Made by a program: the position numbers and the translations under genes. From Saccostrea echinata (lineage: Eukaryota), in NCBI RefSeq assembly GCF_033153115.1, contig NW_026889813.1, positions 3,472,001 to 3,536,000 of the forward strand: a stretch of 64,000 bases of DNA, given 5' to 3'. Below are positions 6,678 to 52,644 of this stretch, piece by piece (the first letter of the stretch is position 1; each line of letters starts with the position of its first letter). A model generated the notes under the pieces. The model saw only the letters and a list, made by a program, of their open reading frames with translations. It was not told where the DNA came from and searched no databases.

Positions 6678-8399
6678 ATGGGAAGACACAGAGGATTTGA
6701 TGAGTACCTAAGAAAAGCTGCAGATAAGGAAAAGAAAAAGATAAAAGAATCAGTATTGGAGGGTAACATATATATAAGTTAAAATGTTGGCAGTCGATTC
6801 AATCTATTGCTCAAATATGTCATTTACTAAGATTACCATTTTATTTCATTACTTTAAAGATGCTGATAGAAATATTTTTATTCAACATTTAATACAAGAA
6901 ATATAATATACGTAAATTAATTTATCTATGAACTATTGAAAACATTTTTTTTTTTTTTTTTTTTTGTTTTTAAGAAAGAGAAATCATAAAAAAAAATTAA
7001 TCTTCATGTTTATTCTTTCTGATAGTCTTTAGGGCTAGATCCAAGTCTCCTGGAGGAAATGGTGCATTTCTTGTTGCTGGGATACATGGTGAAAGTGACG
7101 AGGGAAAGACAAATACAGCAGAAGATAGAAGTGCCACAGAGGACATCATGAGTCCAACAGAAAGAAAATCAAGGGGGAGGAAAAGAAAAAATAACAAATC
7201 AAAAGAAGATAGGAAAAGGCATAAGGTGCTTGCCAGTTGGTTGATTCAAATACTTATGATAGTTTGATTATGATGTTAAAAGGAAAGAAAGGGCATACAT
7301 TTAAAGAAACCGAATTTTAAAATGGTTTCAAACTTTGTACTGTTTGTTGGCTTGTAGAATACCCAAGGAACTTTAAAGAATTGAAAAAAAAAGATTCTTA
7401 TTTATAATTTACCCTTATTACTAAAGATGTTTAAGAAACATATGATTAATATAGAAAATGAGGAATGAGATTCTTTCCTTCATAATGCAATTACAAATCA
7501 AAGTTCTCAGCACTGAAGAACAATCCAAATTACTGGAAAGTGTTCAGGTGGAAGCTGCAAGAATAATTACGGGCATTAGGTGCAGTACATCCAAAACTAA
7601 CCTATATAATGAGTTGGGATGGGAAACCTTAAGTTCAAGAAGGGAAAATCATAAGCTCACACTGATGTATAAAATTCTTAATAACCTTACCCCTGATTAC
7701 ATGTATAACATGCTTGAGGGATGTATGCCAATTCAGCATAATTATAATTTACGCAACACAAACTCATATCATATCCCAATCACTCAAACAGTGTCTTACT
7801 ATAATAGTTTTGTACCATCCACAAAATCCTTATGGAATAATTTACCTGATGATTGTAGAACTTCCCCTACATTGCAAAATTTCAAAAAAAGATTAACCTA
7901 CACCAATCCCATCAAGAAAAATAAAGTCAAGTTGTACAATTATGGGAATAGAATTGAAAATATACTACATTGCCAGTTGAGAAATAAATGAAGTAACCTT
8001 AATGCTGATCCTTTTAAAGACCACCTTAATGATTCACCATAATGTACAAATTGTGGATACATGTACCAAATTGAAGATTCGTTACATTTTTTCATATATT
8101 GTCCACAATATGTTCTACAAAGACAGATACTGATTAAATATATGAATGAGAATGGCATACCAATTAATATAGATAATATACTATATGGTGATGAATCCTT
8201 ATGTTTAGAAGACAACTTTTCATTTTTTGATCATGTACATGCCTTTATAAGAAACTCAAAGAGGTTTTCATTGAAATCTTAATAGTTTATCATGATATGC
8301 TAGGAAGAATATTATCTCATTTTAGGCATGTTAAGGAATTTTTTCCACTCTGAGTCAACTTTATTATGTTTTTTTAATGTTTTTTTCTCTCTCTCTATT

Positions 8400-8441
<42 letters not shown>

Positions 8442-12900: not shown

Positions 12901-15059
12901 CATAAAAAAATTAATGTCCAAAATAAAAAAAAGAATCCTTTCAATTTAAGAGACAGTCTTTCCATGAATATAGTTTCGATTAATGTATATATTGAAGGAA
13001 TATTTTGACAATGTATAAGACTTGTATTTTTGTTAAAAATGACATTTATGCACTTGCAATCTACTTTTCACTCTTTAGTGCACTACGGTCTTCTACCCCT
13101 ACTCCATCCCTGCAAAGAAATTCATCTATAAAGAGATCTCTATTAAACAGATATCTGACTCCAAGGAAAGGTATTATCAGTCAGTTCCTTAAAGCAATAT
13201 GAGCTGCATTTTTGTGGATTTTATTTTGTTGGTAAAATGTGCTGATCTGATAAATCTGTATGTAATTTAAACCTTTATGATCAGTTAGACTAATGTAAAG
13301 TATTAAATTTTTTTCAGAAGAAAGATTTCTATACAATGGAATGTATAGTTTTATGTAAGAAATCAATATTGTACAGGACGACAATAATTTATTTTGCTTC
13401 AATCAAAGCATATAAATAGTTCTTCCATCGCAAATATAAACAGTAGAAGTTCATAAACCTTTCTTTTTTCTGTCATTTAAATAGTTAACTACAATATTGC
13501 AACAAAAATTTCCAACATCAAAGTTGTAGCTCATATTGCTTTCATCATTTACAAACATAATTACATTTCCTAAATACCGGTAAGTGACTGTGATCTCACC
13601 TCACAGCAAACTTAGCTGGTGATGACGTAGACCATTAAGATACATTATTTATTCATTTTTTAAGATGAGAATAAGGAAAATAGAGAACTGAAAAAAGATG
13701 CAGTGTCTCCCACTGTAGTAAATTCAAAACCAAAGTCGAAAGAGGTGAACCAACCAAAGCAATATGTAAAGATACCAATCACCCCTAAAGAAGTGTACAG
13801 GTCCAATTTACATAAAACCAGTAGTCTACCAGATCCACCTGGAGTACAGGAGAAGCATGAACCTTTCTTCCATGATCTCTCAGACATTCAAAGTGATGCA
13901 CAAACTCTTTTGGAATGCCATGACCAGATGATGGCAGAAGCCAATAAATATATGATAAAAGTGACAGCAAAGAGAGAAGAAATTTTCCTGGAGGATTTGT
14001 GCAATGCAGATGGTCTTGACATCCTCAGGAAACAGGACGAGCATGCCAGGAAGCTACAGGAGCAGGAATGGAGGAGGAGTAAGGACGAGGACAGCTGGAG
14101 GAGCCTGTTTACAGAGCATAATGAGGTCCGGTCCTCATCACAGACCTCCTCAATGTCCTCAGGTTACCAGGGCAGTCAGATACTCAGGGATACAGGAAAC
14201 TGCAGGACTGAAACAGTAGGTCGTCAAAGGACAGGCTTAATATTTAGTTGGATTGTTAAAGCCGTTCATAATTCATGACTTCTTATTTATTATATGATCA
14301 TGGATATGGACCTTTAATGTTCTCTAAAATTTATAGTATATACTTGAAAATATATTGCAGAAACTCTTCAACATTTCCTCTAAAGTAGCATATACTGATT
14401 ATCTTCTTTTAGGTACCAGCATATGCAGCAACAATCCAGTACCCAGAGTTTATGCCTCAGTTTCATGACAAAGACTACTATAGTGGAAACCACACAAGTG
14501 GAATGTCCAGTAAAGTATGCATCAAATTTAAATATGCAGCTAGATCAGAAAATGTCCCATTATTATAGTAGGGATAACATCTGCATTACATGTATTATGT
14601 GATCAGTAAATTTTCTTGCAAAACTCTTTAGTTTCCTTTCTTGAGTCTCTAATTATTTGTATCAAACTGTCATTGTGAATCTGTTACCTTGTAAATTTAT
14701 CAACATTATTACAATGGTATGTTATAATCATAAATATAATGTGATATTTTCAGATTAAATCACTGGATATCCTGGAAATCCTTGACAACAATGAAGTAAA
14801 ACCCCAACGCGGTCCTTCAAGTCAGGACACATATCTGTATACTTCAAATACGTTATCTAGCAGAGACATTATTGACAACCTTATCCCAGATATAGAGGTC
14901 CCCAGCAGGACCCATGCCATGAACAGGGATAGTATTAGTGAGCAAAGATCCCCCCACAGAGCCTCGCAAGAGGAGTATCATTTCTGTTTGAAGAAACCCA
15001 GCTTAGACACACCCAGTCCTCCTGAGGAGTTGTTCAAAAAGCACTCACTCATTCCTTAA
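6678..15059 (+). CDS. ~648-aa largely disordered protein with PRR19 (DUF4641)-like motifs; 14 coding exons, plus a possible upstream micro-exon 6154-6183
   Basis: Phase-consistent GT-AG exons 6678-6762, 7026-7225, 8719-8772, 8876-8950, 9123-9174, 11267-11384, 11569-11703, 12168-12222, 12559-12631, 12788-12836, 13079-13170, 13665-14215, 14413-14514, 14754-15059 (1947 nt, no internal stop); AATAAA at 15389. Motifs RIARNRMTKRLGLFNQGKKSETVSR and [38 protein letters not shown]; KEN box; basic NLS-like tract. The gene model is more secure than the family assignment. Confidence 0.7.
7513..8617 (+). mobile_element. 5'-truncated CR1/L2-group LINE (ORF2 C-terminus plus 3' UTR)
   Basis: QVEAARIITG...LYNELGWETLSSRRENHKLTLMYKILNNLTPDY...YNLRN...SFVPST..LWNNLP with internal stops; 3' tail aataaatatgttttaaact; 13-bp TSD aaagttctcagca at 7500-7512 and 8618-8630. 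Confidence 0.88.
8402..8438. repeat. (CT)n microsatellite in the LINE 3' UTR
   Basis: Perfect ct dinucleotide run. Confidence 0.9.
9279..10460 (+). mobile_element. HINE / non-autonomous Helentron carrying ~166-bp satellite units
   Basis: ttt|tagctcacctgg..tcaagtgagct head, gtcc/gtct microsatellite, tandem units (tcaaatcatgac at 9624 and 9790), subterminal caggtgagc and ggctcatgggcc hairpin, T-rich target. Confidence 0.85.
10481..11064. mobile_element. TTAA-flanked non-autonomous DNA element (Kolobok/CryptonV-like)
   Basis: ttaaggtcagac...gtcagaccttaa termini. Confidence 0.6.
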
Positions 15060-15854: not shown

Positions 15855-18800
15855 TTATGGCAGATCTGGAGGTTCTTCATCAGAATCAAATTCCACATCT
15901 TCATCTTTGACCCACTCCCCTTTCCAATTCTTCTTCCATCCTCCTCTACAAAAATCATAAAATCAACGTAAATATTTAGAGATAGGATTAACATGAGAAA
16001 GGAGTCAGTGTTTTATAAGCAAATGACAGATGCACAAGATGTTTCAAAAATACAGGCTCAAGAGTATGATGTGAGAAACATAATGCATGCAACAGCACGT
16101 ACCCTCTGTAATACAGGTATTTGTCTGCTAACTTCTGTTTTTCTCTTAGTTTCCTTTCATCCTCTTCACTTCTTTGTGGTACTGTCTTTTTATTTTTGGA
16201 TTTTGATACAATTTTAAGGTTGTTTGTGGACGTATTTGAAGATTGCTGAGAGTTATCTGGAGTGTGATTAGGGACTACAGTTCCTGCTGATATTTTAGTC
16301 TCATTGCCTCTACACTGTTTAGCACAATTCACCATCCCAGTGTCACATTCAGAATTTTCTGTTGCTTTCCTTTTGTATGGCACAGGGTTAAAGTGGTTTG
16401 ATTTTGGCACTGAGAAAATATTTTTTAGTTGTTTTTCATGGAGAAAGGGTCCTTTCTGGCCAAGAAAATGTTCCCTGAAGTTTTTGTTGCTTTTGAACTG
16501 ATCAGAAACATTAGCTCCTATACTGTCTTCATTTTTCATACTTGTATCATTAGCTGAAACATCTTTCTTCAGTATTCCAGATACAACTGGAGATGAATTT
16601 GATGAAACTCTTTCTCCTGGGAGTGAAGATATGTCTGTAGCCATTGGAAATTCACACTGGCTTGACACACTGTCATTGCTGGATTCCCCCAGGCTTACCC
16701 TTGTTTTTCGGGAATGAAACTTTTTCTTCACTCTGGGGTCATACTTGTGTCCACAACCTAGTCCTTTGTGTGATATTGTTGCCTACAATATTTCACAATT
16801 TTACTGAAAACATATGCAAGGAAAAGTATGCATAATTCTACTAAACCCAAATGCATTCAAACACCTTATCATTTTGGTCAATCATCATTCATTCTATTCT
16901 TATAAATAATAAGATATGAAAATTTAAATTGCTATACTGTATAGGGGATTAATTTCAGGGGTTGTAATTTTCACGTTTTTCTCTCCCCTGACACGATCAC
17001 AGTTTGATGAATTCACAGAATTTGTATCCATATATGATAAAAGTTACCTCCCTTGTCTGCATCCAGTGTAGCCAAAACGACATTCATTAGCGTTATGTAT
17101 TCACTTCATGAACAATACTTGGGGAGGTTTTAATGAAGTGGTTAGATTTTGTTATTAATTTATGATTCATCAAAACAAGTGCCATTAAATGTCCTTGACT
17201 ATAAACATCGAATGACTTTCCTGTAAGCTATTACGATGAGTGCATATGTACACCCCAAAATATTCTTTCCGAAGGGATAACACATCGCAGCGAAAATCAA
17301 TGGACGATAATGTGTTAATATACGTCAATGAAATAATATCCTTCCATATCTATATCAAGTGCGAGAGTTATTTGAATAATTTTTTTTAGCCCAAATATCG
17401 ATAAAAACTAACATATCAGGTAACAAATTCATGTGGTAATGTTAGTAACGCACGGGTAATCAAAACCCACGACCCATGTGTTTTGATTGATCAAACGTAG
17501 CGTTGGCTATTAAAACAGCTTTTTTAACAAAAAATACAGGTCATTATTTGCTGATTTGAATTTAAGAAAAGCATGATAATTGAATAATTGAATGACAAAT
17601 ACCACTCGTAATAACTGAATTACTATCTACTGTACGTATCTATAAACCTGTCGTAATCTATACTCAAATTTCAAAAAAAAAAGTTTATTGAAAACTTATT
17701 CACTGTTTCTTGAATTCAAAGATTTATTGACACCGTGAATACAGGGAATATTTACACCGCGAGTTATTTTCCCCCTATACAGTGAGTGTAACAGGAAGGG
17801 AGAAAGTGTATGGCTGGACTGGGAATCAAAACCAGGACTCCTGCATCACTAGTCAGGTGCTCTACTGACTGAGCTATCCAGGCCAATATCGACGGCCCAA
17901 ACCATTACATTCTTCCCTTTTAAATTGTCTTCGTCCTTAAAGTAACGACCCAAGTTCTTATTAACCCCTGTCAAGAGCACCTGACTAGTGACGCAGGGGT
18001 CCCGGGTTTGATTCCCAGGCCAGCCATACATTTTCTCCTTTCCTGTTACATAAGCTATACCTGTTTGATATTTGTAGTTCCATCTTTTAAGTACTGTTCG
18101 TGTTTTCTCTGCTTTATAAGCATTTCTAGCTCATCTTTCTTTTCTTGAAACTGTTCCATATCTGAAATAAGGAAATCATAGCACGTTAAGTGTCAAGTTC
18201 TCTTGGGATGAATTTGGTTACAACAAATAACTACTTAACCTTGTTTAACCTTGTTTACTATTTTTGGAAACCAGAACTTTGAAGTACTGGTAGTTCTTTA
18301 AAAGTCATGAATAAACAGTTAAAAATTTTAGGAATGACTCTAATTCTTGGCCAAATTATTCGAGTATAACCTGGTTTGGGTCAGTTTACGCTTTATAATC
18401 CGCGAAGAATTAGAGTCATTCCTTATAATTTAATTCTAAAATCATTAAACAACTGTGGGTGTAAAATCTCGTTGCTTTTTATTAGTTCAAATTTGCCACT
18501 CAATAATACAACCGTAGTAACGGAAGTGATGGGAAGCAAGGGGAGGTAAAAACTGATATATAGTCCTAGCAGCCATGTTGTTTGTTTACATGTGGTAAGA
18601 TCCGAGTTACTGTTTGAAGTTAAAGGTACATTTACTAAATCTGGAATTTTCCATGAATCCCGAGGACTGGAAATGAGAGGATTGCATGGATACAGATGAT
18701 TCAGCTGGTTGTCAGGGGGGTGTGTCCCCATACCAAACCAGGTTATACAGAAATAATTTGTGTTCCTTTTTTGATATTAACCAATCAGAGGCTAGAATAC

Positions 18801-26600: not shown

Positions 26601-29600
26601 ACCTTGTTGACGATAACATGTTTTAACCTAACAAGACATTTTAGATGCCTGTTAACTAACCCTTAATTTGGATTTTTGATCTCAGTCTGTTTATCTACAG
26701 GTATATGATTGTCCATAGAATAAATAAACCATTTTGTTTTATAGAATAATCTGATTTTGACTTCTACAAAAGCCAAAATGTGAAGAAATATTCCTAAATT
26801 TTAATAAAATATCACTTGAAAGAGCTGTATATCTCTAGAAAGAGAGTGATTTGGTTTGTTCTTTTTGCTGCTGAAAGTATAATCATTTATCTGCCTAAGA
26901 TCACAAACTTTGTTTGCTGAAGTACGCAATTATCATTGAATTAAGAAATTTAAAATCACCTATGTTTCCTAAACTTTGCCTTCCTTGCACCGAATGTCCG
27001 ATAACAACCGAATAGCCGATAACGCGTTGAGCAGTGTGTTAAAAGGGGGCAGAGACTTGACCTTTATATATACATTTGTGTATCATATTTTAGATAGCAT
27101 TTTAATTAAATATATTGTTATTATACATGCGAAATAAAATGAAACCAAAGCAATTCTTGTGATGTCAATTCATTTTACGTACCAGTCTATATGTTTAATA
27201 CAGCTGTTCTTAGTTTTATACACTCACTACTCATTTGATTAATCAACATGTACTTGCATTAATATTTTAATCCTGTACGTTAATGGAGTCTTTATTTTTT
27301 GCTAATTTAGAATCTATTTTATCAATACCAACTCAATTTTTATTCAATCACAAACAAAAGTCCTTTAATGTCTCCAACAGTTGATAACCAACTGTGTAAG
27401 TTCAATAGATCGATACTTTGAAACCATGCATATTTCTTCATGCGTAAAATAGGTAGCACAAACACAATACACAATTACAAATAAAACTTATATGAAATAA
27501 TATTTTTAAATTAAATGGTAATTAAACATTTTTCAACATCATATGGTGTGCATTTTGTTAAGATTTACATTCAAAATATGCAAAATGTGAATGCATCAAA
27601 ATTCCCATCATAAAAAATTTTAATTGATACTGTAATAATGAGAGATGAAGTTTTACTGATTTATATAAGTTGCTGATACTTTATGATTATCAACGTTTAT
27701 ACCCTTTAATGGTCTGTAATTTTAGGGAGTGTTATCAAAGCATGGGATTTGGGAATTGCAACCATGAAAAAAGGAGAACTAGCAAAGTTCACCTGCAAAC
27801 CAAAGTATGCCTATGGAGAAACAGGGTCTTTACCAAAGATTCCAGGCAATGCTACCCTGATTTTTGAAGTGGAACTCTTCAGTTGGAAAGGTAGAAACAA
27901 TTGTTATGATTGCATGTGTCAAATTTGCAAATATTGTTTAACCTTTCGTTCTGTTGCAATTTAAAATTATATAGATTTGCAGCAGGACTGGCAAAGAAAT
28001 GGGTGACCTTTTACAATCATAGTTATTCATAGTAGGGTATCTTCCTATATATACAATAATATCTGACACAGCTAGTAACTCCTACCTCTGTCATTTAGGT
28101 GAAGATTTATCACTGAAGGCTGATGGGTCCATTATTCGACATATAACTACAAAAGGAAAAGGTTGGAAAAATCCAAATGAAGGAGCACAGGTTAAGGGTA
28201 GGTACATGTAAACCGATTCAAAAATTATATTTCTAAGTAAATTATAATCATTTAACATTCTACCTTTGAAGCAGAGAGGATTTAATTTTGATACTGAATA
28301 ACTTATAGTTTTTTGACATTGAAACCTTGGTATTTTCAAGAATTAAGGTAGATACAGTAACCAGATCTAAAAAAAAAATTGGTGTATTCTGATGATTAAG
28401 AATAAATGTTTTTTAATTATCTTCTTCAAATTACAGTACACTATGTTGGTAGACATGGAGAGAATGTATTTGAAGATCGACAGGTAGAATTTAGTATCGG
28501 GGATGGAGTCATGTCTAATGTCATAGAAGGATTAGAAATAGCTATTAAGAGAATGAAAGAGGGAGAAAAATGTCGTCTAGACATCAAATCAAGTATGGCT
28601 TATGGATCTAAAGGGAATTCGGAGCTAGGAGTACCTCCAAATGCAGACCTTGTGTATGATGTAGAACTACTAAGCTTTGAAAATGTATGTGGTCAAATAA
28701 TTATATATATTTTTCTTAATATCTGCAATGTAAGATCTGAAATCATCATAGTGGCTTACAATGAGATGCAGTCAAACCTCATTATCTCAACCTCAATTGG
28801 ACCAAAAAATGAGATATGTAAGGTTTTGAGATGTAGAAGTTAAAATACATAACGAAAAAGTGGATGGGACTTCCAACTCACTTCAGCATATCCATATAGT
28901 TGCAGAACTGTAGCGTTATGGTTTTATATTTTATTCTTTGATCATAACACTACAGATCCTGTATTGCAAATATGGTGCAATATTTTCTGCGCACGGTTGG
29001 GGAGATTTCTCCACTTTCCAGCATTGATCAATCGACTATGTTTCACTCGATCCCTAATTCTAGATATAATGTATATTTCTAACCAAACTGTATTCCTATA
29101 TTTTTTAGGTGGATAAAATATATAGGTTTGTTAAAAATTTGTCTAGAATTAGGGAGTGAAAGGTAGTTGATTGACCAATTCTGGAAAGTGGAGAAGTTCT
29201 CCCCAACCATGTGCAGAAAATCTTATAATATTTGCATTAAGGGATTTGTAGCATTATGATCAAAGAATAAAATATAAAACCATAACGCTACAGTTCTGCA
29301 GCTACATATCCATGGTATTCAAGACATTGATGTTTTTAATACTAAACTTGAAGTGTATGTGAATAAGTGAATAACATAAGTAGCCAATAAATAATATTTG
29401 TTTCTCAATGTTTTCTCTATATATAACTACAAAAGAATATTTTTATGTGTCTTATTAGGCAAAAGAGAGCTGGGAAATGGAGCCCCATGAGAAACTGGAG
29501 CAGTCTGTCATGGCTAAAACAAAGGGAACAAAATTTTTCAAGGTAAAACTTGCAATTATTGTATAAATATGGCCATATTATTTGAATATTTGTAGTCAGG

Positions 29601-51807: not shown

Positions 51808-52644
51808 TTAGGAACCTACATTGAACCTGTACATCTTGACTTTGTTAGTGTTATACTGTGTCAAGTAAAGAACAGATTGATTATCGATGCCTAATCCACT
51901 TGGGCCGCTAATTCCATGTCCTGGCGTTAGAACAAAACAGAGAAATTGTCCTTCCTGATCAAGGCAGTGGACAGAGTCATTTTCCATGTCACAAACAAGG
52001 ATGTGTCCGTCAGAATCGGCAAAGATTCCGTAAGGTCGGAAGTCAGAATAGGATCTATGACCTTTATAGGTGGACCGAAGGTCACCCTTTCTATCCACAA
52101 TTATGACTGCATTTTTATCATAATCTGAAACGCAGACGTCTCCATTGAAGTTTTCAGTGAGGTAATGGGGAAGCTGGAATAAGTCCTCTCCATTAAAATC
52201 TCTGTCTATATTCTGAAGGGCTTTTCTTCCTGTTTCATCAAACCTCGTTACCCTCACCTCGCCACATTTGCTCATACCCAAAAGAAGGTCTCCGTTGAGT
52301 TTGGAAGAATAAATACTGAATGGTTTCCAAGAGCCAGTGTCCATAAATTGTAGCCATTTTCCGGATGTTATGAGTTTTGCCCCTTTTATTGCATTGTCCG
52401 CCATATTAATTGTATGGTTTGGTTTATCCACGAACAATAAATCGCCATCTTTGGTTACTGAGTGGTAGCCCTCACTTACGCCAGCAGTTAGAATTCTCTG
52501 AATCAAATATCCCGACGGATCCAGTTGTACTAGGTGCCCATATCCATCACTTACTGCGATGTTCCCATAATTATCTACAGAAATGTGGTATCCATCTTTA
52601 ATTCCAGGGACTGTGATCTCTCGCACTTCTCTAATAATAGACAT
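51808..52644 (-). CDS. NHL-repeat six-bladed beta-propeller protein (bivalve TRIM-NHL-like family), 278 aa
   Basis: Repeats PHYLTENFNGDVCVSDYDKNAVIIVD, RPYGIFADSDGHILVCDMENDSVHCLDQEGQFL and PSGLGID. A possible acceptor at ~52664 means an upstream exon cannot be excluded. Confidence 0.85.
   Translation of the reverse strand: MSIIREVREITVPGIKDGYHISVDNYGNIAVSDGYGHLVQLDPSGYLIQRILTAGVSEGYHSVTKDGDLLFVDKPNHTINMADNAIKGAKLITSGKWLQFMDTGSWKPFSIYSSKLNGDLLLGMSKCGEVRVTRFDETGRKALQNIDRDFNGEDLFQLPHYLTENFNGDVCVSDYDKNAVIIVDRKGDLRSTYKGHRSYSDFRPYGIFADSDGHILVCDMENDSVHCLDQEGQFLCFVLTPGHGISGPSGLGIDNQSVLYLTQYNTNKVKMYRFNVGS

What the first reader, a model, noticed from the sequence alone, without database searches (positions are those of the whole stretch)
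6678..15059. Candidate invertebrate homolog of the meiotic crossover factor PRR19
An apparently orphan disordered protein has two blocks that align, in order, with the conserved blocks of mammalian PRR19 as I recall them. IARNRMTK-RLGLFNQGKKSETVSR aligns with [63 protein letters not shown] aligns with [38 protein letters not shown]. A KEN box is also present. PRR19 partners CNTD1 in crossover designation in mouse, so a molluscan ortholog would imply that this module predates vertebrates.
Basis: partly seen in the sequence, partly recalled or inferred. Interest (0 to 1): 0.75.

Follow-up and report, generated by a model that had tools for sequence, protein, structure and literature searches.

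The report
Oyster disordered-protein gene, PRR19 link unproven
This is a real, already annotated oyster gene for a mostly unstructured, probably nuclear protein; its proposed kinship to the mammalian meiotic crossover factor PRR19 could not be shown, and molluscan PRR19 relatives were in any case reported in 2020.

Summary
The sequence observation holds. Window 6678-15059 (+) carries a 14-exon gene with AG/GT at every splice junction (27 intron-side sites). Exon by exon it translates exactly to database protein P0007 (648 aa, NCBI "ankyrin repeat domain-containing protein 12-like", Saccostrea echinata). Both quoted blocks exist, and each spans an exon junction. The protein is largely disordered (AF2 mean pLDDT 44.6) and single-copy.

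Every search found relatives in oysters only. The KEN box is not conserved, and 21% of shuffles contain one.

No test here shows the PRR19 kinship:
- Pfam Pro-rich_19 (PF15455) matches none of 6 oyster proteins, the central region or single exons.
- The protein is not proline-rich (4.9% P).

In favour:
- Block 1 is the best-conserved module in oysters.
- Block 2 is predicted as helix-linker-helix.
- A basic stretch lies upstream, matching the published order of an Arg-rich CR1 before CR2 and CR3.

The evolutionary claim is not new. Bondarieva et al. 2020 (PMC7303132) reported PRR19 homologs in scallop, other molluscs, brachiopod, lancelet, echinoderms, an annelid and cnidarians. Expression could not be checked.

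The parts
6678..6762 (+). Exon 1 (start codon; residues 1-28 plus a split codon). It forms the first part of a conserved N-terminal helix.
   Evidence: Exact match to P0007 1-28, donor GT. AF2 helix 5-34 with pLDDT about 78-85. Conserved block 22-43.
7026..7225 (+). Exon 2 (residues 30-95). It includes the Arg/Lys-rich stretch at residues 75-95 (7163-7225), which looks like a nuclear localisation signal and is a possible counterpart of the Arg-rich CR1.
   Evidence: Exact match to P0007. Invariant R78 R80 K81 R82 K83 K86 K88 K92 H94 K95 in 7 of 7 oyster sequences. The NLS and CR1 readings are inference.
8719..8772 (+). Exon 3 (residues 96-113).
8876..8950 (+). Exon 4 (residues 114-138).
   Evidence: Lies within AF2 helix 100-146.
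9123..9174 (+). Exon 5 (residues 139-155). It holds the second half of block 1 (KRLGLFNQGKKSETVSR), the best-conserved module.
   Evidence: Block 132-155 is invariant in 19 of 24 columns across 7 oyster sequences.
11267..11384 (+). Exon 6 (residues 157-194).
   Evidence: Short predicted hairpin plus helix 167-177.
11569..11703 (+). Exon 7 (residues 196-239), predicted disordered, with an invariant T228-P229.
12168..12222 (+). Exon 8 (residues 241-258).
12559..12631 (+). Exon 9 (residues 259-282). It holds the first half of block 2, the first predicted helix and the KLFPER linker.
   Evidence: AF2 helix 252-273, pLDDT 62-71.
12788..12836 (+). Exon 10 (residues 284-298). It holds the second half of block 2 and the second predicted helix.
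   Evidence: AF2 helix 284-303. Conserved block 285-296.
13079..13170 (+). Exon 11 (residues 300-329). It carries invariant TPTP (305-308) and TPRK (326-329, a proline-directed kinase consensus kept in 6 of 7 sequences).
13665..14215 (+). Exon 12 (residues 331-513). It carries the KEN at 13673-13681, which is not conserved. It also holds a predicted helical pair at residues 402-476 (13880-14104) and the conserved SSGYQGSQILRDT.
   Evidence: Exon-level homologs were found only in oysters.
14413..14514 (+). Exon 13 (residues 514-547).
14754..15059 (+). Exon 14 (residues 548-648 plus TAA). It carries invariant SLDILEILD (550-558) and an invariant C-terminal block at 618-642 (14964-15038) with TPSPP.

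Best explanation
Window 6678-15059 (+) is a real, single-copy, already annotated oyster gene of 14 exons. It encodes a 648-aa, Ser/Arg/Lys/Glu-rich, mostly disordered protein.

Shown: the exon structure; identity to the RefSeq model P0007; conservation across Saccostrea, Ostrea and Crassostrea/Magallana; seven short, highly conserved modules separated by fast-evolving linkers.

Inferred:
- The protein is nuclear, because residues 75-95 form an invariant Arg/Lys cluster.
- It works as a flexible adaptor that binds partners through its short helices: residues 5-34, 100-146, the pair 252-273/284-303, and the pair 402-476.
- It is regulated by proline-directed (CDK- or MAPK-type) phosphorylation, since 7 of its 11 S/T-P sites are kept in 7 of 7 sequences.

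No test available here demonstrates kinship to PRR19. On present evidence the resemblance is at or near chance level, so the gene is best filed as an oyster-lineage disordered protein of unassigned family.
For: - Exon-by-exon exact match to P0007 with AG/GT at all junctions; tblastn map.
- All 10 own-genome matches fall in this one locus.
- Homolog searches returned oysters only: 5 of 40 candidates, 4 proteins at E<=0.001 in the exhaustive 1.84-billion library for exon 12, 6 of 8000 scored and 6 of 2033.
- Pfam gave no significant family for any of 6 oyster proteins, for 9 exon pieces or for the central 272 aa. The PDB profile search gave only one hit at E 0.72. The ESM Atlas best scores were 0.83 and 0.77, in the range that shuffled proteins reach.
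- AF2: mean pLDDT 44.6, 440 of 648 residues below 50, helices as listed.
- Conserved blocks and composition (P 4.9%); S/T-P conservation.
- Full-length orthologous ORFs of 715 aa sit on Logan contigs of only 2493 and 2957 nt. Those contigs must be intron-less, so the Crassostrea-type ortholog is transcribed and spliced.
Against:
- Oysters should have a PRR19 homolog if the published distribution holds ('most metazoans except Ecdysozoa', 'other molluscs', PMC7303132). An uncharacterised disordered protein with a basic stretch followed by two conserved helical modules is what such a homolog would look like.
- Nuclear localisation, phosphorylation and the adaptor function are inferences with no experimental support here.
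Confidence: 0.5

Rival explanations
1. The gene is the oyster member of the PRR19 family. On this reading the basic stretch (75-95) is CR1 and block 1 (132-155) is CR2. The helix-linker-helix of block 2 (252-303) is CR3 and docks into the groove of the cyclin-like CNTD1. The protein would act with CNTD1/CDK2 at crossover-designated sites in pachytene, as in mouse. The oyster protein would be about twice as long, with extra lineage-conserved modules.
For: - Block 1 has 19 of 24 invariant columns, against 265 of 648 overall.
- Block 2 is predicted as two helices. PRR19's third conserved region binds CNTD1 (PMC7303132, passage read). PRR19 is predicted to use two alpha-helices for this (bioRxiv PMC13192651, passage read).
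- CR1 is described as arginine-rich, and an invariant Arg/Lys stretch lies upstream here.
- PRR19 homologs are reported in scallop and 'other molluscs', so an oyster ortholog is expected.
- The gene is single-copy. Invariant S/T-P sites fit a cyclin-CDK partner.
Against: - Pfam Pro-rich_19 (PF15455, 363 positions) matched 0 of 6 oyster proteins at E<=10, nor the central region, nor any of 9 exon pieces. It also found nothing in the six-frame own genome (uninformative because exons are tiny and the controls did not ring).
- No search from the oyster side reached any protein named PRR19 or any non-oyster.
- The protein is not proline-rich (4.9% P, at most 6 P in any 30 aa), whereas the paper says all family members have proline-rich segments.
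- The paper's CR2+CR3 HMM search of the reference proteomes reported as significant hits only the scallop among molluscs, and no oyster.
- The pairwise similarity, by my hand arithmetic on recalled strings, is marginal.
Confidence: 0.35
2. The gene is an ANKRD12-like ankyrin-repeat cofactor, as its NCBI name says.
For: Only the automatic NCBI/UniRef name of P0007.
Against: No ankyrin-repeat family matched any of the 6 oyster proteins at E<=10. The five orthologs in other oysters are all named 'uncharacterized protein'. AF2 shows no repeat fold. The name most likely stems from Lys/Glu/Ser-rich low-complexity similarity, which is inference.
Confidence: 0.02
3. The protein is an APC/C-Cdh1 substrate, degraded in a cell-cycle-regulated way through its KEN box.
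For: KEN at residues 333-335.
Against: The motif is not kept at the aligned position in the sister Saccostrea (KEK) or in the Crassostrea/Magallana-type sequences. 21% of shuffles of the same composition contain KEN.
Confidence: 0.05

Closest known systems
PRR19 (proline-rich protein 19; Pfam PF15455 Pro-rich_19), partner of CNTD1 in mouse crossover maturation
   Same: Both are largely disordered proteins with a few short conserved regions predicted to hold short secondary-structure elements. In both, a basic (Arg-rich) region lies upstream of two further conserved regions. The candidate CR3 here is a two-helix module, like the predicted CNTD1-binding helices. The taxon (mollusc) lies within the published range of the family.
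   Different: There is no Pfam PF15455 match. The protein has 648 aa against 366 aa in mouse and is not proline-rich (4.9% P). It has at least four further oyster-conserved modules: the N-terminal helix, the helical pair 402-476, SSGYQGSQIL and the C-terminal TPSPP block. Kinship is untested against real PRR19 sequences.
COSA-2 of Caenorhabditis (bioRxiv 2026, PMC13192651)
   Same: It is another disordered protein, without confident orthologs outside its genus by BLAST, proposed to bind the COSA-1/CNTD1-type cyclin through two helices. That is a precedent for rapid sequence divergence in this functional class.
   Different: Only the passages mentioning PRR19 were read.
ANKRD12 (source of the NCBI name)
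   Same: Only a Lys/Glu/Ser-rich composition, by inference.
   Different: There are no ankyrin repeats.

Membership tests
PRR19 (Pfam PF15455 Pro-rich_19) | Significant match to the family profile | tested here: not met
   hmmscan at E<=10 listed PF15455 for none of 6 oyster proteins, for P0006 alone, for the 272-aa central region of P0007 or for 9 exon pieces. Caveat: HMMER's filters drop most matches above E of about 0.1. By my recollection the model is built mainly from vertebrates.
PRR19 (Pfam PF15455 Pro-rich_19) | Reciprocal sequence search links it to accepted PRR19 proteins (vertebrate, or scallop A0A210QF54, lancelet C3Y2J1, Lingula A0A1S3HP68) | tested here: inconclusive
   Forward searches found only oysters: 5 of 40, 4, 6 of 8000 and 6 of 2033 candidates. 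Word and length limits apply.
PRR19 (Pfam PF15455 Pro-rich_19) | Architecture CR1 (Arg-rich), CR2, CR3, CR4 in order | tested here: inconclusive
   The basic stretch 75-95, block 132-155 and block 259-296 lie in that order. The real CR sequences are in Supplementary Fig. 2 of PMC7303132, which was closed, so the correspondence rests on recalled strings.
PRR19 (Pfam PF15455 Pro-rich_19) | [quoted passage not shown] | tested here: not met
   Proline is 4.8-5.1% in 5 oyster proteins. P0007 has at most 6 P in any 30-aa window.
PRR19 (Pfam PF15455 Pro-rich_19) | Binds CNTD1 through CR3 and surroundings | not testable with these tools
The monomer AF2 model shows helices 252-273 and 284-303, which is compatible but not a test.
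PRR19 (Pfam PF15455 Pro-rich_19) | Expression in gonads with meiotic prophase cells | not testable with these tools
ANKRD12-like ankyrin-repeat proteins | Ankyrin repeats | tested here: not met
   No Ank family among the Pfam results for 6 of 6 oyster proteins at E<=10.
APC/C KEN-box substrates | Conserved KEN degron | tested here: not met
   KEN is not kept in the sister species or in the Crassostrea-type sequences. Chance occurrence is 21%.

The most novel reading that the evidence does not exclude
The oyster protein is a true but highly diverged PRR19. It is twice the vertebrate length and has lost the proline-rich character. Its most conserved module (K-R-L-G-L-F, block 1, equal to CR2) is a cyclin-docking RxL/Cy-type motif. 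Together with the CR3 helix pair, that would make PRR19 proteins two-point binders of the CNTD1 cyclin. The extra oyster-conserved modules (N-terminal helix, helical pair 402-476, C-terminal TPSPP block) would be ancestral partner-binding sites that vertebrates lost. The RxL reading is my own inference from the motif's form. The 2020 paper states that no functional motifs were detected in the CRs.
Probability: 0.1. Interest if true: 0.45.

Novelty: new member of a known kind. Interest (0 to 1): 0.2.

Why it matters
If the PRR19 reading holds, the gain is modest. It would put a name on an 'uncharacterized' (or mis-named 'ANKRD12-like') gene in several farmed oyster species. It would also add a very diverged sequence that helps define the minimal CR2/CR3 signature of a crossover factor. 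It would not change the evolutionary picture, because PRR19 homologs in molluscs, a brachiopod, a lancelet, echinoderms, an annelid and cnidarians were reported in 2020 (PMC7303132). If the reading does not hold, this is an ordinary lineage-restricted disordered protein.

Tried and rejected
1. My first exon model, made by eye, had wrong boundaries. It was corrected with the ortholog models: exon 1 joins exon 2 at 7026, not 7033, and exon 4 starts at 8876.
2. Pfam per exon, per protein and on the central region gave only insignificant hits to unrelated families (MHCassoc_trimer E 0.15, DUF3464 0.15-0.73, MVP_shoulder 0.15, DUF3774 0.04, TY-Chap3 0.031). I treat these as noise.
3. The ESM Atlas, on the whole protein and on residues 100-330, gave best scores of 0.83 and 0.77 with unrelated names and structural TM<=0.31. 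It produced no lead.
4. The PDB profile search gave one hit at E 0.72 (Prp39), which I rejected.
5. The genome search with PF15455 in the own genome found no candidates. The controls did not ring either, so this is uninformative.
6. The paper search combining PRR19 with mollusc terms at min_terms 2 was badly designed and returned unrelated bivalve papers. PRR19 plus 'invertebrate' returned 2 papers, only the 2020 paper being relevant. The six oyster LOC identifiers returned 0 papers. So I found no printed assignment of this oyster gene to PRR19.
7. The search of earlier findings returned two notes on a transposon elsewhere in the window and nothing for PRR19/CNTD1. Neither bears on this finding.
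8. Synteny gave nothing. The neighbours seen (an FKBP_C exon, an NHL-repeat ORF) say nothing about PRR19.
9. I considered a metagenome-contig scan with the oyster alignment and did not run it.
10. The spliced protein was never joined by me from the exons. The joined step was left out, and the database protein P0007 was used instead, checked exon by exon.
Full report
**What is in the sequence**

The window is AT-rich animal DNA (GC 0.29-0.37). Between 6678 and 15059 on the + strand lies a 14-exon gene. My first boundaries, set by eye, were partly wrong. With boundaries taken from the ortholog models, every acceptor is AG and every donor GT, and the reading phases are consistent. The exons sum to 1947 nt (648 codons plus TAA). 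Each exon's translation is an exact substring, in order, of database protein P0007 (tblastn map).

P0007 is a RefSeq model that NCBI names 'ankyrin repeat domain-containing protein 12-like [Saccostrea echinata]'. The joined step was left out, and the database protein, verified exon by exon, was used for whole-protein work. The gene is single-copy: all 10 matches of P0007 in the window's own assembly fall in this locus.

Both quoted blocks are present, and each spans an exon junction:
- Block 1 lies at 8930-8950 plus 9123-9173 (residues 132-155).
- Block 2 lies at 12559-12630 plus 12790-12828 (residues 259-296).
- KEN is at residues 333-335 (13673-13681).

The protein is largely disordered. AF2 on a 7-sequence oyster alignment gives mean pLDDT 44.6 and pTM 0.18, with 440 of 648 residues below pLDDT 50. 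Helices are predicted at 5-34, 100-146, 167-177, 252-273, 284-303, 315-324, 402-443 and 446-476. So 'orphan-like disordered protein with two conserved blocks and a KEN' is correct as a description.

**Relatives**
- Exon 12 (183 aa) against the 5.8-billion-protein collection gave 5 proteins among 40 candidates. All were exon-sized ORFs on short Logan/ENA contigs.
- The exhaustive HMMER search of 1.84 billion representatives gave 4 proteins at E<=0.001. One was the full-length P0006 (646 aa, 85% identical in the exon).
- P0006 as query gave 6 proteins among 8000 scored candidates.
- P0007 restricted to residues 105-330 gave 6 among 2033 at E<=10.
- Every named hit is an oyster (Saccostrea, Ostrea, Crassostrea/Magallana). 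All are called 'uncharacterized protein' except the ANKRD12-like label of P0007.

Two 715-aa orthologs lie on Logan contigs of 2493 and 2957 nt. That is too short for a gene with introns, so the Crassostrea-type ortholog is transcribed and spliced. The tissue is unknown.

**Conservation pattern**

Seven blocks are highly conserved among 7 oyster sequences: residues 22-43, 131-149, 285-296, 403-411, 494-506, 541-552 and 618-642. Block 1 has 19 of 24 invariant columns and block 2 has 18 of 38, against 265 of 648 for the whole protein. So block 1 is the best-conserved module. Block 2 as a whole is only average, though its second half is conserved.

Of 11 S/T-P sites, 7 are kept in 7 of 7 sequences and 2 more in 6 of 7. 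An Arg/Lys stretch at 75-95 is largely invariant. From these I infer a nuclear, proline-directed-kinase-regulated adaptor with short helical binding modules. That mechanism is inference, not shown.

**The KEN box**

At the aligned position the sister Saccostrea has KEK, and the Crassostrea/Magallana-type sequences have unrelated residues. Ostrea keeps a KEN nearby. 21% of 20,000 shuffles of P0007 contain KEN. The KEN box carries no weight.

**Is it PRR19?**

Pfam has a PRR19 family, PF15455 Pro-rich_19, with 363 positions. It was not listed at E<=10 for any of 6 oyster proteins, for P0006, for the central 272 aa of P0007 or for 9 exon pieces. Searching the own genome with it gave no candidates. 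The controls also did not ring, so that result says nothing. The PDB profile search and the ESM Atlas gave nothing usable.

The protein is not proline-rich: 4.9% P, and at most 6 P in any 30 aa. The 2020 paper says all family members have proline-rich segments.

No PRR19 sequence could be obtained. By my own hand arithmetic with BLOSUM62 on the strings as printed in the finding, the blocks score about 17 and 22 bits. For 648 x 366 residues that corresponds to expected chance counts of about 1.6 and 0.05, which is marginal for one pre-specified pair and not significant for an open-ended recollection.

In favour:
- The blocks are in the same order as in the recalled PRR19 strings.
- They fall on conserved oyster modules.
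- A basic stretch precedes them, and CR1 is described as arginine-rich.
- Block 2 is predicted as helix-linker-helix. This fits the report that CR3 and its surroundings bind CNTD1, and the 2026 preprint's statement that PRR19 is predicted to bind CNTD1 with two helices (only the passages naming PRR19 were read).

I put the PRR19 reading at about 0.35.

**What is already known**

Bondarieva et al. 2020 (PMC7303132) was read as passages and as the whole Methods section 'Protein alignment'. [quoted passage not shown] An HMM of CR2+CR3 hit scallop A0A210QF54 (E 3.1e-05), lancelet and Lingula. BLASTp from these found members in other molluscs, echinoderms, Capitella and a coral.

My searches found no paper that names this oyster gene: and with 0 papers for six LOC identifiers.

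**Expression**

The look-up of sequencing runs listed 4 runs of one study holding 0.60-0.63 of the sampled words of 13665-15059. The exonic share of that stretch is 959 of 1395 nt (0.69), which would fit spliced RNA. Gonad-specific expression stayed unchecked.

**Verdict**

This is a real, ordinary, already annotated gene. The descriptive observation is confirmed except for the unverifiable alignment. The KEN box is noise. PRR19 kinship is possible but unproven, and the available profile test failed. Even if the kinship is true, the evolutionary conclusion is already published. Interest is low.

Noticed in passing
window 7458-8282 (+), inside intron 2: A 177-aa ORF (7458-7991) and a following 73-aa ORF (8061-8282) look by eye like the tail of a non-LTR retrotransposon ORF inserted in the intron. 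Pfam gave no family at E<=0.01 for the 177-aa ORF.
   Followed up: partly
window about 8390-8440, intron 2: A (CT)n microsatellite of roughly 45 bases (read).
   Followed up: no
window 9624-9746, 10178-10321, 10328-10447 (-), intron 5: Three short minus-strand ORFs end in look-alike peptides (...FLCKTL..H..P.L..), suggesting three copies of one dispersed or tandem repeat in the intron.
   Followed up: no
window 15988-16731 (-): A 247-aa Ser/Asn-rich ORF lies just downstream on the opposite strand. It is probably an exon of a convergent neighbouring gene. No Pfam family at E<=0.01.
   Followed up: partly
window 28406-28843 (+): This ORF carries an FKBP-type peptidyl-prolyl isomerase domain (FKBP_C, E 6.9e-20) and is probably an exon of a neighbouring FKBP gene.
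   Followed up: partly
window 51808-52644 (-): A 278-aa ORF with NHL-repeat / beta-propeller matches (NHL E 2.5e-06), probably the C-terminal exon of a TRIM/NHL-type gene.
   Followed up: partly
P0007 (window 6678-15059): The public name 'ankyrin repeat domain-containing protein 12-like' looks like a misnomer. No ankyrin repeat was detected in any of 6 orthologs, and the orthologs in other oysters are all 'uncharacterized protein'.
   Followed up: yes
Crassostrea/Magallana-type orthologs P0009, P0010, P0011 and exon ORFs P0002-P0005, aligned after P0007 residue about 462: These sequences carry an insertion of about 45-55 residues, rich in W/R/E/K/G (repeated ...W(R/K)... units), inside the second helix of the helical pair. 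Saccostrea and Ostrea lack it.
   Followed up: no
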